A stretch of 62,909 nt of DNA, filler included, from Sluysia triapertura (Eukaryota), in NCBI GenBank assembly GCA_046118255.1. It is 5 parts of 5 records of this genome, joined end to end, with 100 filler letters (N's around TTAATTAATTAA, not from the genome) between each part and the next. Parts side by side here need not be neighbours in the genome. Positions count along the whole stretch, not along the records: positions 27,780 to 38,871 come from JBJNIA010189031.1; 4 more parts are not named here. The stretch is one strand, 5' to 3'. The translations under genes were made by a program, and so were the position numbers. Each line of letters starts with the position of its first letter. Position 1 is the first letter of the stretch. Shown here one piece after another: positions 27,780 through 38,871 of this stretch. The notes under the pieces are model-generated. The model saw only the letters and a program-made list of their open reading frames with translations, was not told the origin of the DNA and ran no database searches.

Positions 27780-27929
27780 CTCTCATTATTTTACTTTGAT
27801 TAAAATATTCTCTATAGTTATCTTACTATTTCAGTTCATCATAATGCCTCGTCTTAATTCTTTAATAACGTTCCACTTATCCTAAGTTTTGACCTTTATA
27901 TCAACCCTTGTTCTTCACTAATCCCAACA
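27780..27929. repeat. Dispersed repeat family D, copy 2
   Basis: Reverse complement aligns with 16077-16233. Confidence 0.7.
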
Positions 27930-27968
27930 AATATAATAGAGAAGTTTTTATCCTTTACTCTTATCTAT

Positions 27969-28017
27969 AAAATCCAACGGCTGGCCCTAACTGGTAAGTC
28001 TAGTACGTTGAACTCAC
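27969..28017 (-). repeat. Family B module
   Basis: Minus strand GTGAGTTCAACGTACTAGACTTACCAGTTAGGGCCAGCCGTTGGATTTT. Confidence 0.8.
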
Positions 28018-31000
28018 TTAAGTTAAGTTTTATTCTATCATTTTGATTTACTTTTCTCACAATTATAATGCATCTAACACATTTTACGATAGATACAAAA
28101 TTCAAACGTGACAAAATCGCATAAAATTTCTCTACCTACTCTTTTTGTAATTTTAGTAACTAATTTTCTTTTTTGAACCTTTCGCCGAATTTATTTGCCT
28201 AACTTTGTCTAATTTTATCGAATATATAATGAGTGGTGTGGGGTCCTCGATTTAACAACACAGAAAGTATATCCAAAGAATTAAAGAAGATAAAGTAATT
28301 GTCAAAAATTATAAATATGCACCAGAATTTTATAAATACGCACACAGACTAATTGTATAGGTATGGTGATTTTGTGATTTTTGTAAATTTGCGTAAAATT
28401 AAATAGATTGCAAAGTAGTACATTGATCGGTGACATAAATAGCTACGAAAATATCTAAAGAACTTATAATCGATTTTTTTCTAGAAAAAAACTAAACATT
28501 AATTGTAATTATATAATAATAAATATTAAATGAAAATACAAATCCAGTAGTTATAGAAGTTTGTACATAACTCAAAATAAATTTTATAAAATAAATGCTT
28601 TGGTTATTCTACATAAACATTCTTTGAAATTTGCCAGTTAAATTTGTCAAAATCGAAAAATTGGGAAATTTGAATAATCGAAGAGGAGAATTTAAATTTG
28701 TAAAAGTATAAGTTTGTTTGAAAATGTTAACGATTTCGGAATTTAAGTCTATCAAAATGTTTGGGGAATTTTAATCATTTATTTAATAATATCTTAATAA
28801 TAATTTAATAATATCTTAATGTCTTTTATGAAATATCTTTTTATATTTGATAACTACGAAAACTGATACCCATATTTTAATAGAAATTTGTAAACCAAAA
28901 TAACGGCAAACGGCAATACAAGCACAACTTTTAAAATATCCAGAAATATGTTTAAGTAAAAGCTCTGAAATTCATATCCTTTAAAATAATAGACCAACTA
29001 TGTACCACAATAATAACAATTGTTACAAAAGAAAAATCCCGCCCAAAAAAGAACAAAATACTTCTTCAAATAGGAAGCTTGACATGGATTTGGAAAACGT
29101 TTGAAATTGTAAACTTTGAGAACTTTTAAGACCTTATTAACTCTTAAGAATCTTTTAAACCTTGATAGTCATTTGAAACTTTTTAGGAATCTTGAAAAGT
29201 ATTTGAAATATTTAGAGAAATAAAATCATTGTTATGAATATAAAAGATAATATTAATATTAATAATTAACATAAAGAAATAGAAAAAAGATTCAAAGTGG
29301 TAAAGATGAAAATATCTAGAACTTCTGAGTGCCTAATAAAGTACTAAATAACTTTAAAAAACGTTAAACATAAAATAAGTTAAGTCTAAAAATAGATTAA
29401 TTAAAATCTTAATTAAATTAGTAAAGAAAACGTTATATCAAAATTTTAACTCTTGATATGAAGGAGGAAAATCTAGAATTGAATCTGAAATGCTTATAGA
29501 ATAATAACCTTAAATATTTTTCATTAGAAAACTTAATATGTAAAACTAAAAATTAATTGAATTCTAAAAACTAAAGTTAAATTCATTATTTTTATTTATG
29601 TTGACAATACTAGCGATTGTTATTTTAATATGAGAATTTAAGAAAAATTAGACTTAGTAGAGTAAAAGAAAGCAATAGTTGATCATTATGTTCTGTACCT
29701 ACTAAAATCTGACAGGCTGTACCATGTAATTGTCAAAGCTGTAATTGTGGGTCTAATCTTCAGAGGAAGTTCAAATGATTTGTGTAAGAGAATGTTTGAT
29801 TGAGAACTCAGAATTGATTGGATAAGAAAGTATAAAAGGAATATATACAATATACAATTTTAAAAACAATGGTTTATAAATTTTATTTAATAAATTTAGG
29901 GAAATCCCTTGTTAATTTATATTTAGAGAGAAAAATTGAACTGTAAACATTTAGGAGAATCCCTCTTTGTTCATTCAATAGTTTATTTTGTTATTAGTTC
30001 ATTATTTAATACTGTTTTATATTATTAACATTTCATAGTTGTTTTATTTGCTTTGAATATTGATAATTGTAAGATTAGTTAAATTCATTTGTCGTAAGTG
30101 TTTGATTATAATATTTGCATTATAACTGAGTTTGAATTTTATTTCGATTTACTGAATTTTTGAATTTAAAGTTAACATAGCAATTGATTAAATTAAATAT
30201 TTTAAAAGACGCCACATAAATATTTTCGAATTATTTGTGTAATGTACCATATAAATGTATAATTATTGGTCTCAGTAACTTATAAAAAATAAACTAAAAG
30301 TGCATTCAAGAATGATTATTTTTGAATTCGATTATTAGTTAGAAATAATAAAATAAATAACCTTTTAAAGTACCAATTATAATCCACATCATCATATTAT
30401 GAGGATGTCGTTTCATAGCCATTAAAACTCCTTTTTGTATTTTTTTAGTTCGTTGAATTTCTTTTAATATACACAAAAGGTATTTTACAGGACGTATTCG
30501 ATTTAATTTATATATTAAATCTAAGGGACAGTAATTTACAGCATACCTGTAATAAAAATAAAATTAGCATACTGTGAAAATATTTCCAAAATACATCAAA
30601 TCATATTTCAAAGAATTGTGAATCATATATATAAATTACATTCAACAAGGTAAACGAATTAATAGGTTTAAAGAATTATTCCAATATTTAATCGATCTAA
30701 AAAAATCACTGAATTAAAATTTGTAAATCTTGCTATATAAAAGATTTTTCGATTTTTACATGTTAGAGTTCACTTAAAAAAATCCTTAACAAATCTTATT
30801 TGGTTAGATGAAAATGATAATTCGCAACAGACGGTAAAGATAAAAAGCTTATGATCAGTATTTGATGGAACTGATTACGAATGTAATACATTCCGAACTT
30901 GATTTTAATGACCCAAAACTTAAATTATGAACTTTAAATCGATTACATAAAAATGATGCTGTAATCGATTACGATTGTTACTTTAATAGGATAATGCAAA

Positions 31001-31533
31001 ACTGCACATTTCAATTCAAATCAAACAAAAGTTACAGAAATGAATAATTATGACGGTTTACCTTATCCAATTTATAATCCAGATTATCATTTATGTATTC
31101 ACGGTCGACAGGTTACTTTTCCAGATCTGGTTTCAAAATAGGTAATTGCAATAAAACACAATGGAAAATTCTTAAAACATATGAATTTCTTGTCAAATTA
31201 TTTTGATTTTTAAATTAAATTAATTTATTAAATTAAATTAAATTAATTAAACTAAATTAATTAATTAAATTAAACTAAACAGAAAGATTTATTGAATTAT
31301 TTATGTGTTTCAGTGAATGATATATAATTTAATGAGTTCATATATGATCCAAGTCTTACAAAATAGCTGTTCACAGGATTATGAATAACTTATGGAAGTC
31401 AATAAGTAATCATATTTTCTAAAGTTGTGAAATGTCAAATATGAACACGTTATAAAATTATCTACTTCAAATTTTATTGTTATTAACTTGTTTATTGTTT
31501 AACATGTTTAAAAATCTCGACTGCAAGCATAAA

Positions 31534-31900
31534 TGGTTGGACAAAATGGCATCACCAAAACATATTCCAAAGCGCAATATTTATCAAAAGAATCTGATGG
31601 TGAGTGTCTGATGAAACCTGGCTTCTCAATCTCAGTAGAAATGCACTGCAAATGGACAAAAACATAGATTGAACAGATTGATCTTATTGCATGATAACGT
31701 TAGACCATGCAATAACGCTAGACCACAAGAATACTCACCAGAATTAGCCCATTTCTTCCGTAATTTGGACAATTTTTTAATAAGAAAACAATTTAATTCC
31801 GACAATGCTGTAATTCATTGACTCTCGCCTACCAGAGCTTTATACTATCGGCCTGAATAATCTGCCGTTTAATTAAATGGCAAGAGTGTGCACGCTTTGG
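31534..31900 (+). mobile_element. Decayed, internally deleted mariner transposase
   Basis: WLDKMASPKHIPK...QKNLMVSV, LILLHDNVRP, NARP, YSPELA, HFFRNLDNFL and KWQEC match recalled Hsmar1/cecropia-type motifs. Confidence 0.88.
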
Positions 31901-32836
31901 TGAATAAAACAATTATTTATATTTGTAAGTTATCAATTCTTTATACTTTGTCTTTTCATCCTTAATATATAATCATAACAATAATACAGACTAAAATTGA
32001 ATAATAACAAAGTATAATATAGAACAGAATCAACATCAATAATTACAAATTAACAAAGTGAATTTAAATATGGCCAAAGTTACAATACGGAATTAACTGA
32101 CACGTATGAAATGAAATTGGCTTTATAACGAAAATAATTATAATTAAGTGATTACGGATAAATTATTGTCGAATAGAATTGAAAAATTTTTCGAATGAAA
32201 AGTGTTTTTCACTGTAAAAACAGAAAATAAAACAGAATTGATATTGTCAAAGAATGTTTGAACATATCGTTCGAAATTATCTATCGTTGGACAATATTTA
32301 GAGATTAATATTGATATTAATTATTGAATCGGTTGATGTTCGGAAAATATCTTGAAATTAAAATACTATTTACATTATTTTTTTGTTCAAATTTAGACTG
32401 ATTTCGGCAATAGATTTAAGTTGAATAAATTCTTTCTTATCGAGACTTTGAAAGCTAATTTTAAAATTATTTATTCGAACTTAAATCTCTAAAATCAGAG
32501 ACAATTTAGAATTACGACTTCACAAATAAAGATTACTTATTTTAAGGTTTAAAAATTCATTTGATACCAATTAAGATTATTACGACTATTTTTCTGATAA
32601 TGCTAATATTAAATATTGGAACGTTAACTGAAGAGTCCTTACACAAGTTTTCTGATTGTAGTAGATCACAAAAACAAAATGTTAAAGTTTTATAAAGCGA
32701 TTATCATAAGCCATAAAAGGTCGATGAAGTATGATCAGAAAAAAGTCGTCGACCAAGGTAAATAGAATTTATAATGAGATATTAACTATTGAAGAAATTG
32801 GGCTGAAGCGAGAGAATAATGTGCTACAGTTGATAT

Positions 32837-33500
32837 TAATAATAATAATATATTAATTTATATTGCGCTCATATCTACTGCGTAAGTAAATCATTCACCA
32901 TAATATTTCTGAAACAGAAAGAACTTTGTCTTTTTCTTAACTATTTCATAATCTTCCAATAATTTGACATTCTCTGGTAATTGGTTGTATATTTTTGAGA
33001 CATAAAAGGTATACAAACTATTACCTAGCTTGTTATCACTTTGGATTCTGTATAGATTATTATGTCTCAATGAAATATTCATCTTCATTTCCAATTTTCG
33101 CATTATTTCTAAAAGATATCCGGGAATTCGGTAATGTAAGCATTTGTAAATTATTGTCATAATTTTGAATTCTATTCTTGCTTTTATTGGCAAACAATGT
33201 AATTCTTTAAAATAAGGTGTTACATGAGATCTTCTTCCAACTTGGAGAATTAGTCTTGCTGCTTGATTAATTATTAATTGTAATTTTTTCACTTTTCTAT
33301 GTGAAATGGAGTGAATGAATGAATGAACAATAAGTTTGTTTATTAATAAAATTTCGAATGTGTGATATTTTATTTAATTGATATTTACACTTTTTAACAA
33401 CACAATTAATATTTTCTTCTATGTTCATTTTTGAATCCATATAATAGCAAATATATCTCGTACTTTTTTTCGTTGTTTTTGTCGTTCTTTCGATGTTTCA
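32837..33500 (-). mobile_element. L2/CR1-type LINE 3' end with tail
   Basis: LQLIINQAARLI...HVTPYFKELHCLPIKARIEFKI is the typical ORF2 C-terminus. The 3' end GAGCGCAATATAAAT is followed by a short trinucleotide repeat. Confidence 0.85.
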
Positions 33501-36085
33501 GTTAAATCTAATGTTTGCCGTGATTATTAATCTATATTTTCTAGATCCTATCTTTCATTTTCAAGCTTTTCTTTGAGATACTTTAAAGTATTTTCAAGGA
33601 ATTTTTCGGTTTAGTTTATTTTTCTATGTATTAATATTTAATTATTTAATTTAGATTTAGTTTAAGATATTAATTTTTATTGATTTTTAAATTATGATTT
33701 ATAATAATTAAATAATGATATTGTAGCTTAATTAAACAATTTGATAATAGATATATTATTGAGTATAGTTTATATTATTGTTCTATAGCACAACATTAAT
33801 AACTTCACTTTTATAATGCTTATTACAATAATGATGACTTATTAAATTATATCTAACTAGTATCAAAATTACAGAAAAAATCTTCATAATTTTTGTTTAA
33901 AATAAAATAATAATATAAAATAATAATAATTAACATTATATTACAAAATTATAATTATTTTGAACCAAATTTTCAGTCAACACAAAATAAACAATTAATG
34001 TTACTATTTTTTATCCGTGATTTTTTGTAATTATTATTAATATTATTGTTATTATTATTGTTATGATCTAGTTTAAGTATGAGGACAAATTTAGGAACAA
34101 AATTAAAATTGAAACGAAATAAAATTTAAAATATGAAAATTTAATTAAGATATAAAATGGGAATGTTTATTTAAATTAATGTGACCTTGAAAAATTGATA
34201 TCGATGCTTAAATTAACAAAAATATTGATCAATACAAAAAACATTAAAGTTATTTAAATATCTAATTTGATAAATAACTAATGTAACAATATTAATATTT
34301 ATATTACATTATATTTTATTTATTTATATCGTCTTTATATCATTCAAAAGTTATTTTTATTTGGTAACTCAAAACTTTTGACGATTATTTAATAATTTTT
34401 GTTTAAATTTTGCTCAAGTTAAAAGTATTATACATCAAAATTTGTTTAGGAGCGTTGACTTTCAAAATTAAATTGAATAATTATTAATTAAAATAATAAT
34501 AATAATAACAAAATCCAAAATTAGACCTTAAAGTTAAAAAGTTTTCTAAATATACGTAATATTTATTAATATTATGCATATTAAAATAGTATAAATATAT
34601 GCTAAAATGTGCTCTAGAAAACAATAAGAAATAACATTATTTCATATTAATGGAACATTCAATTTACAAATTTAGAAACAAAAGCTAACTTAACTGATAA
34701 TTTATGACCTTTATTATAACATATTTTTAGTTTCCTGCCTGTTTTATAATCACATTCCGTCAACATTTTAAATAGCTAGTTAAATTATAATTAAAATGAA
34801 AGATAGGTTTAAAAGAAATCGATCTGTATTTCTTTTTTCATAATTTGTATATATTTTTACTCCTGATCATCATGTAGAAAAGTCTACAATCAGTTTACAA
34901 GTTTTCATTTCTTGGTGAAGGTTAAAATTATAAAATTTCCAATAGTAGAGATTGAAGTATTAAATTAAATCTAAGTTTCAAATTACTCTACTCAGAAGTA
35001 AACTGAATAAGAAGTCAATACAGTAAGATATATTAATATATAATTATATTAGATGGTTAAAAGTTAAGTTTTAAACTTAATTTAAATCAAATATTAATTT
35101 ATTAAAAATAAAGTTTATTTGTGAAATTATCTAAAATTTAATTCTATTAAAAAAACTTTATTAAAAGTAATAAAATTATTGTTAAAATTTAAATAAAATG
35201 TTATTTAAAAATTAAGGCAAAAAAGTAGTAACATAATAGTAAACAATAAAGTGAATAAAATAATAGTATTTAAATTAAGAGAGAAAAATAATAACATAAA
35301 TACTATAAAATAATGACAAAATACAGTGTAAATGAAACAATATCCAAAAAGTAATTTAACTATATATTACTGTATTACAAAAATAATTAAAAATAGTCGT
35401 TATTATTGAAAAATATATTTGAAGAAGGTGTTTGACTGCTGTTCGAGTCAAAGATATTTCAATAACTGACGTTTTATAATTTAAAGTACATTTTGTAAGG
35501 ATTCATAAATTCACAATTATTTACCAATCCTTTTAATAGGATTGAACGTAAACTCAATAGCTATAAGGACTTTTGTGTTTAATTATTGTTAAACTAAACT
35601 AAGTGTAGAGAAATAGAGATCTATATCATTTTTGTGACAAATGCATTAACATAAATCATTTGTGACAATTTGTGACATAATAAATATTTGCGAAACTATG
35701 TAAATAATAATGTTTTGATTATTATTTTATTTTGATCTGAAAATATAAATATTATAGATATTATAATAAATTTAAATATTAAGAAATATTAAAATAAATT
35801 AAATATCAAAACCAATAGAAATAAAAAATCAGTTTAAAAATTAGTTTAACTATCAGAGAATTTATTATTGGACGATTTGTTTAATCTCTTCAATAAAAAT
35901 AAATATAGTGTAATTCAAAATGGCGACGAAGAGAATATGATATAAATAGGAGTTTTATAGTTATAGCGAACATATTTTTTCGTTTCCTTACAAAATAGCA
36001 GATTAATCCAGAGAAGCAGTCCATATTTAAAGTAATTCGTTTACTTTTAAGTTGTTAAGAAAGTTAAAAATACACTTAAATTTGT

Positions 36086-37467
36086 GCAAGACCTTAATAA
36101 GGCTCGCTTAACTTAATTACTTAAAATAATACAAAAAATCACTAAGATAGTGATTCTTAAGTAATTTAAAAAATTGTTATCGATATTACATTTATTGAAT
36201 TTTTATTAACAGACTCTAAAGTTTTATATATTATATTTACATCTTGTTAGTATTACGAAGGTTTCTACCTTAAAAGCAAAAGAAAAAATCTCTGGAGGAA
36301 ATTTCAGCTAATTAGATACGGTTTATGTCACTAGTTGACGACGATCTAATTAGACTTCTTAATATGCAAAAGGAGAAAGTGGTAAGGTTGTCAGTTTTAG
36401 CTCTTAACAAAAATTAACTTTACTATATTAAGACAGCCTTTTTACGGTCTGTCAACTGTTAACTAGAATTTATATGTTAAGACAACCTTTATGCGGTCTC
36501 TCAAATATTGTAGTAATATAGAGATTAAATAAGCCTTTTTACGGTCTGATTAAATGATAAATGATTTTAAGTAAAAAAATGAATCAACTATATAAACTTT
36601 TATTATGTAAAAAGAAAATTCTATACAAGTAAAAGTCTCAAAAAATAAAATATATAGTAATGATAATAATTTTTCTTCCTTAAGCTTAAGGCTTAGGAGA
36701 TCAAAAGTACAGATTTTATGTTACAAGTTAACCTAGCCTTTTTACGGTCTAGGAAATTCAAGAGAGATTTTAAGGCAATTTTATTTATCCTATTTTATTA
36801 AGATTAGGATTTTAAAAATCTTATGTAATAATAAATTACTTTTTCATGAAAGTTTGGTATTTGGTATGTTTTTGGATTGTTTTCTTAATTAAAAATCTCC
36901 TGCTGATATGCTCCCTTAAATTGTGATTTTCAATTTTCTCTTGTCCTAATCCTAAAAAGTCTTTGCTTTTATGCTTAATTTACCTGGCTTCCGTTTTGTT
37001 TATTGACTATTAAAACAACATTTCCATATGTAAACAGAATTTTCATATTAATTTTATGTATCACAAATTTTTATTATTTCAAATATAATATTCAATAATA
37101 TTTAAATGGATAATGTTAATATCATAATATTGTATTAGAATATTGTTATAGTGAAATTGTTGAAATTGTTATAATAAGTATAATATTCCATAATATTAAA
37201 AAATATTAAAATCAAATAACATTAATGTTAATATCAGAATATAACAATAATATTAATATCAGAATATTGCCATTATATCACATTTAGGTATTATCCAACA
37301 GCGCCGCACCAACAAATCCTAGCAGTATTTTGTTATTCATTAGTTTCACTAGACCTTAATAAGGCTAGTTTAAAGTTTAAAATTTATAAAATCTTTTATT
37401 GCGTACGCTAGACCATAATTTGGCTAGCTTAATTGATTTATAAAACTAGACCATAATCTGGCTAGTT
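36086..37467. repeat. Array of eight bulged hairpins, core AG-A-CC-N7-GG-CT, in both orientations
   Basis: Units start at 36086, 36432, 36481, 36528, 36732, 37348, 37407 and 37444. Confidence 0.8.
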
Positions 37468-38871
37468 CAACGTTGATCCAATATAATCTGTATTAAAGTT
37501 TAACTGGATTGAGTAGTGCAACCTATAAATTGTTAGGTTCATTTAACATTAACTTGATTAGGCGTAAGGTAACGTATTAATTGACAAGCTTAGTTAGCAT
37601 TCTTCTAAGCATATTAAAAATCCTAAGAGACCACCTTCGGTCAGGTATAAGCCGTCTCTATTAGGTGAACTCACTCCAGATAAGAAATATTTTGCAAAAG
37701 ATTTTTTAATATAAAAACCACATCATAAGCAAATGAAGGTTTACTAATTTGTAAAGATGTACAGAAAAGATTTTTTTATATTTTTAATTTTTATATTTTA
37801 TTGTAAAAACTTATTAAATTATTATTATTTAAAAATTTCTCATACTAATTATATAAAAATTAAAAATTATTATTATTATTATTATAAATTAAAAAAGAAT
37901 TTAAAAGAAGATTCGAGAATGGTAAATTGTTTAATTACATTTAAATTAGTTATCTTTATGTGCATATAAAAACAGACATAAAAATCAAGAAACTACAAAT
38001 AATACTACGCCATTTTGAATAATACGACTTTGTTTGGGTTTGAGTCATCTACATTTTAATTCAATCATCGCCAGTAAAATCGACAATTTAACATCCCAGC
38101 ATCTGATCATTTTCTGTGAGCTCCAGTAATTCTCAAGTTCAAAATTCATTCAACGATATCATATCCTGCGTCTACGATTAGAGGGATACATTTTTCATTC
38201 GCAAGCAATCAATTTATTTAAAAGAAAGGGCAATCTGAGAACACGAATATTCATTATTAATTAATTCGTAAGTTTGTTTTACATAGTTTGGAAACTCACA
38301 ATGAGTTAAAATCTACACGCAAAATACTAAGTTTACGGTTGGTCCTTAATACCAATCACAAAATCACTTTGAAATATAAATTCACTACTCTTTAATTGGC
38401 CCTTAAGGTCAATTATAAAATCATTATTACAAGGTAGAGTCTAACACCTAGACCTTTATTATAAAAACTTTTATTTTCACATTATGGAATACGGTTACAG
38501 ATTAATTATTATTTAATTACGAAACTCAAAACAATAAAATAATAATAAATATCTGATTGTTAACACGTCATAAGAGATTTTAACGATTTTTGACGGTGTG
38601 GGACGCTGATTCTTTGGCAATTATTATTTACTATTAGAAGGAGATATCGAATCAGCTTGTCATGTCATATAAATAAAATCATTCCAGATATAATTGAAAT
38701 CTTTTACCGTGTTTCATGATGAATTCATAAGTTTATTTATATTAAGGTTGCACTATAATTTTTATTGTTAAAATAGACTTAAATTAACAATTTTTTTTCT
38801 GACACTCAATTTTAAAATCGGAGTAAATTTTGTAGAAATCCATAATTTTAATCTTGATTATAATAGATTAT

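What the first reader, a model, noticed from the sequence alone, without database searches (positions are those of the whole stretch)
35913..38020. Mirror-symmetric 2.1-kb non-coding element with opposed arrays of covarying bulged hairpins
The segment is bounded by an inward-facing 13-bp inverted repeat ATTCAAAATGGCG, which contains a YY1-like core. Reading inward, each arm has a donor-like site (GTAAGG near 36382; GTGAGT at 37674) and then a cluster of AGCC-N7-GG-T-CT hairpins: four on + (36432, 36481, 36528, 36732; first three spaced 48-49 bp) and three on - (37348, 37407, 37444). One more sits at 36086. Loop length (7 nt) and the single bulge are constant while outer stems covary: GACAG/CTGTC, CCTAG/CTAGG, ACTAG/CTAGT, GCTAG/CTAGC. 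Three units have mismatches. The arms are otherwise not similar in sequence. Inference: multivalent protein-binding sites on RNA or ssDNA in a non-autonomous element with convergent promoters, linked to family B.
Basis: partly seen in the sequence, partly recalled or inferred. Interest (0 to 1): 0.85.

Follow-up and report, generated by a model that had tools for sequence, protein, structure and literature searches.

The report
Foldback-like transposon with hairpin-repeat arms
The opposed hairpin arrays are real, but they belong to a roughly 1.4-kb non-coding copy of a multi-copy repeat, most likely a foldback-like DNA transposon whose inverted arms carry variable arrays of a small bulged palindrome, not to a unique 2.1-kb regulatory element.

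Summary
The motif is real. Eight units of N5-A-CC-N7-GG-N5'-TTAA (core AGACC-N7-GGCT) lie at 36086-37470: four point left, three point right, and one sits alone outside. Chance predicts about 0.01 exact matches. Stem pairing covaries: 94.6% of cells are paired against 80.3% in shuffles, and three pairs show compensatory changes.

The proposed frame does not hold. The 13-bp bounding inverted repeat scores at chance level for this piece, and donor-like hexamers are not enriched. The arms are in fact related: 36276-36396 aligns in inverted orientation with 37695-37579 (36.3 bits against 20.1±2.0 in shuffles), followed by a second collinear inverted block.

Contigs of the one public run that holds this DNA show the arms are multi-copy. 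Summed depth there is in the thousands, against 10-25 for single-copy sequence. Other copies carry more or fewer of the ~49-bp units.

No ORF, Rfam family or tRNA is present. The neighbourhood holds other transposon remnants (a CR1-like tail and a mariner remnant).

Best reading (about 0.55): a non-autonomous foldback-like TIR transposon of ~1.42 kb, whose palindromic subrepeats are multivalent binding sites for an unknown transposase. Superfamily, target-site duplication and expression could not be determined, because no other copies were retrievable. Interest is modest.

The parts
36276..36396 (+). Left terminal inverted block (flanking domain). It contains a long bulged hairpin at about 36308-36353.
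   Evidence: Aligns in inverted orientation with 37695-37579: 36.3 bits against 20.1±2.0 in shuffles (0/300) and 18-23 bits for other segments of the piece. Hairpin. A unique Logan contig ends at 36278 (table 8).
36428..36453 (-). Hairpin unit u2 (TTAA plus GACAG-CC / GG-T-CTGTC as read on the + strand).
   Evidence: DNA dG -4.3 kcal/mol. Local summed depth about 48.8k at 36439 (table 4).
36477..36502 (-). Hairpin unit u3, degenerate: one mismatch and one G:T pair.
36525..36550 (-). Hairpin unit u4, with one stem mismatch.
36708..36753 (-). Second collinear inverted block, containing hairpin unit u5 (36728-36753).
   Evidence: Aligns inverted with 37492-37446: 31.9 bits against 17.1±1.9 in shuffles. 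Unit (dG -3.8).
36754..37347 (.). AT-rich middle domain with short tandem repeats and no ORF of 35 aa or more.
   Evidence: Summed depth is 160-430 at 36880-37279, lower than most arm bins. No inverted homology.
37348..37373 (+). Hairpin unit u6.
   Evidence: dG -4.9.
37407..37432 (+). Hairpin unit u7.
   Evidence: dG -5.5.
37445..37492 (+). Hairpin unit u8 (37445-37470, followed by TCAA instead of TTAA) plus the flank homologous to 36708-36731.
   Evidence: dG -5.5.
37579..37695 (-). Right terminal inverted block (flanking domain). It contains a long hairpin at about 37622-37665.
   Evidence: At least 65 other contigs cover 37645 (table 3). Another copy's contig aligns over 37481-37716 (table 8).
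36086..36111 (+). Solitary hairpin unit u1, about 165 bp outside the left end and in the opposite orientation. Probably a remnant of another copy.

Best explanation
The region 36276-37695 is one copy of a multi-copy, non-autonomous class II element built like a foldback transposon. Its ends may reach 36260 and 37719.

Layout of each arm, from the outside in:
- a ~120-bp terminal block;
- an array of short units, each a 7-bp stem with one bulged A, a 7-nt AT-rich loop and a following TTAA.

The two arms face each other across an AT-rich, non-coding middle.

Proposed mechanism (inferred, not shown): the units are repeated binding sites for the transposase encoded by an autonomous relative elsewhere in the genome. 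Several dimers bound on each arm would help bring the two ends together for cut-and-paste. The arrays grow and shrink by slippage or unequal exchange, and can spread as satellite-like 49-bp arrays.

Shown here: the inverted homology of the arms, the multi-copy status, the variable unit number and the stem covariation.

Inferred: protein binding and mobility. Whether the sites are read as duplex palindromes or as extruded hairpins is undecided.
For: - Inverted homology of the arms: terminal block 36.3 bits against 20.1±2.0 in shuffles; second block 31.9 bits against 17.1±1.9. The two blocks are collinear.
- Depth from the one public run, summed over contigs at 80% identity or more: 8.4k, 2.0k, 1.7k, 4.5k and 1.7k in the arm bins, and 44-160 just outside and in part of the centre. 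Unique contigs have depth 10-25.
- A unique contig stops at 36278. At least 65 other contigs cover 37645.
- Joints 36455->36524/36528 (one unit fewer), 36548->36434 (units added) and 36451->36727 show that unit number varies between copies.
- Each arm matches other copies at 80% or more, yet matches its partner arm at only about 60-66%. This fits intrinsically different left and right ends better than two insertions of one sequence.
- No ORF of 35 aa or more lies in 36025-37756. No Rfam family or tRNA was found.
- The units are polar. All outer ends carry TTAA and the two arrays are mirror-oriented.
- Precedents: foldback elements have a flanking domain, tandem repeats of variable number inside the TIRs and a non-coding middle, and Galileo's TIR repeats hold extra transposase sites (PMC4079207). 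A dimer of the piggyBac cysteine-rich domain binds a palindromic 19-bp internal repeat (PMC7351741).
- The surroundings are transposon-rich: a CR1-like tail and a mariner remnant matching PF01359.
Against: - No target-site duplication or sharp terminus could be identified. The TTAA at 36270 and at 37706 are uninformative in DNA of 23% GC.
- No second full copy could be retrieved, so movement as a single unit is unproven.
- The 200-bp depth bins cannot separate the left terminal block from the very abundant unit u2.
- Depth is a sum of contig k-mer depths, not a copy count.
- The arms are only about 60-66% identical.
- No transposase is known for this family.
- Compensatory stem changes and the invariant bulge are not what a simple duplex half-site model predicts. 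They hint at hairpin recognition.
Confidence: 0.55

Rival explanations
1. Not one element but two neighbouring pieces: two related hairpin-array repeats lying head to head (short MITE-like or SINE-like units, or dispersed 49-bp minisatellite arrays with their flanks), or an old local inverted duplication. There would be no joint mobility.
For: The centre is far less repeated than the arms. The A-type unit (about 49k depth at 36439) is much more abundant than the B-type units (about 3-6k at 37418-37439). A solitary unit lies outside the element at 36086. No target-site duplication was found.
Against: The arms share two collinear inverted blocks. Two independent copies landing within 1.5 kb in mirror orientation is improbable for a family of hundreds to a few thousand copies. 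Two insertions of one family should resemble each other about as much as each resembles other copies (80% or more), not 60-66%.
Confidence: 0.2
2. The units act as true hairpins in single-stranded DNA or RNA. They would be recognised by structure (bulged A, CC/GG closing pairs, adjacent TTAA) by an HUH-type enzyme (Helitron-like, or REP/RAYT-like) or by an RNA-binding protein. This is the core of the first reader's idea.
For: At least five compensatory double changes against about four pair-breaking changes among eight units. The bulge, loop length and 3' TTAA are invariant. The one wobble pair is G:T on the AGACC strand. The terminal blocks hold longer hairpins, and the left one has the same stem-A-CG layout. 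A hairpin at 38337-38357 in a neighbouring high-copy repeat would take a stem-bulge-CC-loop-GG-stem layout if the bases most other copies carry at 38350/38351 are substituted. That reading is inferred, not folded.
Against: Only eight related units, so the events are few. The hairpins are weak: -3.8 to -5.5 kcal/mol, and three are degenerate. The element has inverted arms, which Helitrons lack. No HUH gene, no RNA data and no Rfam match. Strict sequence conservation of AGACC, GGCT and TTAA also fits duplex recognition.
Confidence: 0.12
3. A host regulatory module of 2.1 kb, bounded by YY1-like sites and carrying convergent promoters and splice donors.
For: CGCCATTTT fits the YY1/Pho consensus (from general knowledge). 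The inverted pair exists.
Against: The inverted repeat is at chance level. There is no homology between it and the arms. Donor-like hexamers are at chance. The arms are multi-copy. No expression data exist.
Confidence: 0.03

Closest known systems
Foldback-like DNA transposons (Drosophila FB, Galileo, Tetris; Tm1 of root-knot nematodes)
   Same: Inverted arms made of an outer flanking block followed by tandem subrepeats whose number varies between copies and between arms. Non-coding, variable middle domain. Non-autonomous copies. Subrepeats can amplify into satellite-like arrays and can carry extra transposase sites (PMC4079207, PMC3573991, PMC3169594).
   Different: Here the subrepeat is only about 49 bp, and its core is itself a bulged palindrome with covarying stems and a fixed TTAA. 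The arms are short (about 250-480 bp) and only about 60-66% alike. No target-site duplication or transposase is known, so the superfamily (P, MULE or other) is open.
The piggyBac 19-bp palindromic internal repeat, bound by a dimer of the transposase cysteine-rich domain
   Same: A subterminal palindrome with short arms and a spacer of about 7 bp, present in both ends and read by a protein dimer. TTAA is a key tetranucleotide of that system (PMC7351741; spacer length from my own knowledge of the sequence).
   Different: piggyBac has one such repeat per end, next to a 13-bp terminal repeat that begins with CCC. Here there are 3-4 units per arm, a one-base asymmetry (the bulged A) and no CCC terminus. 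A TTAA duplication at the ends could not be shown.
Bacterial REP/REPIN elements mobilised by RAYT (IS200/IS605-type HUH) transposases
   Same: Short imperfect palindromes with a bulge or mismatch and a conserved adjacent tetranucleotide, clustered in opposed orientation, high in copy number and non-coding (my own knowledge: Nunvar 2010; Bertels and Rainey 2011; Ton-Hoang 2012).
   Different: Those are bacterial and GC-rich and act on single-stranded DNA through a linked RAYT gene. Here the host is an animal-type genome, no HUH gene is in view, and the units sit inside larger inverted arms.
Helitron 3' terminal hairpins
   Same: Short hairpins whose sequence varies while pairing is kept, in a eukaryotic mobile element.
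   Different: Helitrons have no inverted arms, carry one hairpin 10-12 nt before a 3' CTRR end, and begin with 5' TC. None of this is seen here.

Membership tests
Foldback-like TIR transposons | Long inverted terminal arms | tested here: met
   Two collinear inverted blocks, 36276-36396 with 37695-37579 and 36708-36752 with 37492-37446, both far above shuffles.
Foldback-like TIR transposons | Arms contain tandem subrepeats whose number varies between copies | tested here: met
   Units are spaced 49/48 bp and 59/38 bp. Joints in other copies skip or add units (tables 5 and 5c).
Foldback-like TIR transposons | Non-coding middle domain; multi-copy family | tested here: met
   No ORF of 35 aa or more. 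Arm depth is in the thousands against 10-25 for unique contigs.
Foldback-like TIR transposons | Target-site duplication flanking defined termini | tested here: inconclusive
   No convincing direct repeat at 36276/37695 or at 36260/37719. Anchored outward extension of the TIR is not significant.
Foldback-like TIR transposons | Related autonomous copy encoding a transposase (P, MULE or other) | not testable with these tools
   The organism's genome is absent from the viral, metagenome, GTDB and protein collections.
piggyBac superfamily | TTAA target-site duplication and termini beginning CCC/CCY | tested here: not met
   TTAA lies 2 bp and 10 bp outside the alignable blocks (36270, 37706). That frequency is expected in AT-rich DNA. 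The termini read GCAAAA and not CCC.
Helitron | No TIRs; 5' TC and 3' CTRR; a single hairpin 10-12 nt from the 3' end | tested here: not met
   Inverted arms are present. The hairpins are arrayed and each is followed directly by TTAA.
REP/REPIN-RAYT type single-strand hairpin elements | Imperfect palindrome plus conserved tetranucleotide, in opposed clusters | tested here: met
   This is a resemblance in form only.
REP/REPIN-RAYT type single-strand hairpin elements | Cognate HUH (Y1) transposase gene in the genome; single-strand mechanism | not testable with these tools
   No genome access. No such ORF in the 11-kb piece.
Described structured RNA families (Rfam 15) and tRNA-derived elements | Match to a covariance model or a tRNA-like fold | tested here: not met
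   No Rfam match at E up to 1 and no ARAGORN hit over 27780-38871.

The most novel reading that the evidence does not exclude
The bulged hairpin plus TTAA is a structure-specific recognition module read on single-stranded DNA (or RNA), and shared by several repeat families of this genome. That would make it a eukaryotic counterpart of bacterial REP/REPIN-RAYT or IS200/IS605-type hairpin-guided mobility. Covarying stems and the invariant bulge would be the signature of that recognition.
Probability: 0.1. Interest if true: 0.75.

Novelty: new member of a known kind. Interest (0 to 1): 0.3.

Why it matters
This is mainly a correction. What looked like a unique mirror-symmetric regulatory device is a copy of an abundant repeat, with different borders from those proposed.

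The remaining point of interest is the subrepeat itself. It is a short polar palindrome with a fixed bulge, a fixed loop length, covarying stems and a fixed TTAA, arrayed in both arms and present in thousands of units genome-wide.

If a transposase reads it as a hairpin, it would be an unusual recognition mode for a eukaryotic TIR element. If it is read as duplex DNA by dimers, it is an ordinary multivalent end-binding design. In either case the family can seed 49-bp satellite-like arrays, and its inverted arms are likely hotspots of rearrangement.

Tried and rejected
- Rfam (E up to 1) and ARAGORN over the whole piece: nothing.
- Plain blastn self-comparison missed the arm homology. Unweighted local alignment was swamped by AT-rich matches. 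Composition-weighted scoring was needed.
- Outer 13/18-bp inverted repeat as the border: rejected as chance. A long diverged palindrome reaching out to it: rejected. Anchored outward extension of the terminal block: not significant.
- Donor-like sites: at chance.
- Searches for other copies: viral contigs gave only single random hits. Two metagenome scans and one GTDB scan gave none.
- The only public run is coded, stored as contigs, and not recorded as RNA. Expression and strandedness are therefore untested.
- Naming the organism through the CR1-like tail: best protein relatives are only about 40% identical, from fish and unnamed metagenomic contigs. Locus L049 is a different organism without the motif.
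- A covariance model of the unit found no further units in the piece.
- Literal sequence search of the literature: only unrelated hits to the shortest, 12-base term, apparently coincidental.
Full report
SETTING

The usable piece (27780-38871) has about 23% G+C. Its only long ORF is the C-terminal tail of a CR1/L2-type LINE protein on the minus strand at 32891-33292. A mariner-type transposase remnant lies at 31477-31611 and matches PF01359. This is a repeat-rich, apparently intergenic stretch of an AT-rich, most likely animal genome. I could not name the organism: the closest proteins to the LINE tail are only about 40% identical.

THE OBSERVATION

- Motif count. AGACC-N7-GGCT occurs seven times exactly, and eight times with one mismatch. 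All lie within 36089-37463. Chance predicts 0.01 and 0.2.
- Unit structure. Aligned in one orientation (A1), every unit reads: 5-bp stem, bulged A, CC, 7-nt AT-rich loop, GG, 5-bp stem, TTAA. One unit has TCAA instead of TTAA. The loop usually starts NTAA.
- Covariation. The seven stem pairs are formed in 94.6% of cells, against 80.3% after shuffling partners (0/500) and at most 53.6% when partners are slid. Three pairs show changes on both sides, eight cells in all. With only eight related units this amounts to a handful of events. Still, double changes (at least five) are about as many as pair-breaking changes, which is not what neutral drift gives.
- Stability. As DNA, five units fold at -3.8 to -5.5 kcal/mol. 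Three are degenerate.
- Orientation. Units at 36428-36753 point left, units at 37348-37470 point right, and a lone unit at 36086-36111 points right.
- Spacing. Left-arm spacings are 49, 48 and 203 bp. Right-arm spacings are 59 and 38 bp.

So the core observation stands.

THE PROPOSED FRAME DOES NOT HOLD

The 13-bp inverted repeat is exact and extends to 16 of 18 bases, but it scores only 22.1 bits under a composition-aware scheme. The piece contains 11 inverted pairs of at least 22 bits within 3 kb, and seven of them are the hairpin units themselves. Shuffled pieces give 0-5, about 2 on average. The sequence between that repeat and the arrays shows no inverted homology (z 0.8). Donor-like hexamers are no more frequent than chance, 15 against 9.2. 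The two cited sites are not at homologous positions in the arms.

THE ARMS ARE RELATED, IN INVERTED ORIENTATION

- With match scores weighted for base composition, the best inverted alignment of the two halves is 36276-36396 with 37695-37579. It scores 36.3 bits, against 20.1±2.0 in shuffles (0/300) and 18-23 bits for other segments of the piece. Identity is about 60-66%.
- Further in, 36708-36752 aligns with 37492-37446 at 31.9 bits, against 17.1±1.9. This block is a short shared flank plus a hairpin unit.
- The two blocks are collinear. The arms differ mainly in where extra units sit.
- Each terminal block also holds a longer hairpin at the homologous place, 36308-36353 and 37622-37665. The left one has the same stem-A-CG layout as the small units.
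- The centre (36754-37347) is AT-rich with small tandem repeats and no ORF.

THE ARMS ARE MULTI-COPY

One public run holds this DNA. It is stored as contigs, its organism is coded, and it is not recorded as RNA. Contigs were laid on 32880-38871 at 80% identity or more.

| Region | Summed depth |
|---|---|
| Unique contigs | 10-25 |
| 36280-36479 | 8.4k |
| 36480-36879 | about 2k |
| 37280-37479 | 4.5k |
| 37480-37679 | 1.7k |
| 35880-36079 | 110 |
| 36880-37079 | 163 |
| 37680-37879 | 44 |
| LINE tail (positive control) | about 1.2 million |

- A unique contig covers 35777-36278 and stops within 2 bp of the start of the left block.
- At least 65 other contigs cover 37645.
- Another copy's contig aligns over 37481-37716.
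- At 36439 the local depth is about 48.8k, and about a quarter of it has a loop one base shorter.
- Joints 36455->36524/36525/36528 (one unit fewer), 36548->36434 (units added, 30 letters between) and 36451->36720/36727 show that other copies carry different numbers of the ~49-bp unit.

These depths are sums of contig k-mer depths, not copy numbers. The 200-bp bins cannot separate the left block from the very abundant unit u2.

INTERPRETATION

The pattern has four parts: an outer flanking block, tandem subrepeats of variable number inside inverted arms, a non-coding middle, and a multi-copy family without an ORF. This is the architecture described for foldback-like transposons such as Tetris and Galileo. 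In those elements the TIR repeats can also carry extra transposase sites and can seed satellites (PMC4079207, PMC3573991; see also PMC3169594).

Palindromic subterminal repeats read by a transposase dimer are documented for piggyBac (PMC7351741).

I therefore read 36276-37695 (possibly 36260-37719) as one non-autonomous copy of such an element, and the hairpin units as multivalent transposase-binding sites.

One argument favours a single element over two insertions. Each arm has closer relatives elsewhere (80% or more) than its partner arm (about 60-66%). This is expected if the left and right ends differ intrinsically. Two independent copies landing within 1.5 kb in mirror orientation would also be unlikely.

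WHAT REMAINS OPEN

- No target-site duplication or sharp terminus could be found. TTAA near both ends is uninformative at this base composition.
- No second full copy and no autonomous relative could be retrieved. Viral scans gave only random single hits, and metagenome and GTDB scans gave none. The superfamily is therefore unknown, and joint mobility of the two arms is inferred.
- The compensatory stem changes, the invariant bulge and the fixed TTAA leave room for recognition of a real hairpin in single-stranded DNA or RNA. This would be an HUH-type or REP/RAYT-like logic. I put it at about 0.1.
- A neighbouring high-copy repeat (38280-38480) may carry a hairpin of similar layout. This rests on substituting the bases that most other copies carry at 38350/38351, and I did not fold that version.
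- Expression could not be tested.

VERDICT

The motif is real and statistically solid, and its mirror arrangement is real. The element is about 1.4 kb, not 2.1 kb. The bounding inverted repeat and the donor sites are chance features. The whole is a copy of an abundant repeat, best filed as a new member of the foldback-like TIR transposons with an unusual palindromic subrepeat. Interest is modest unless hairpin-specific recognition is shown.

Noticed in passing
window 32880-33450 (-): A 5'-truncated tail of a CR1/L2-type LINE (133-aa ORF at 32891-33292). Summed contig depth is about 1.2 million, against 10-25 for unique sequence. It is by far the most abundant repeat in this piece. Its closest proteins in public collections are only about 40% identical.
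   Followed up: partly
window 31477-31821 (+): Frameshifted remnant of a mariner-type transposase. PF01359 matches 31477-31611 (E 2e-5). By eye, the ORF at 31669-31821 looks like the C-terminal end of a mariner transposase, but Pfam gave no match for it.
   Followed up: partly
window 38080-38480: Another high-copy repeat, with depth up to about 32k. It holds two hairpins, at 38337-38357 and 38393-38415. Most other copies read G at 38350 and 38351. With those bases the first hairpin would become stem, bulged T, CC, TTAA loop, GG, stem, which resembles the layout of the units studied here. I inferred this by hand and did not fold the substituted version.
   Followed up: partly
window 35080-35480: AT-rich segment with summed depth of 4-8k and 30-67 variant contigs. 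It is a further, unrelated repeat family just upstream.
   Followed up: no
window 31196-31296, 34228-34327, 35033-35105, 37780-37867: AT-rich self-complementary stretches (local palindromes of 70-100 bp at 74-81% identity), found in the self-comparison. Their significance in 23% GC DNA is doubtful.
   Followed up: no
window 36129-36160: A perfect 8-bp stem with a 3-nt loop (AATCACTA-AGA-TAGTGATT). It lies between the solitary unit u1 and the left end of the element, and was seen only by eye.
   Followed up: no
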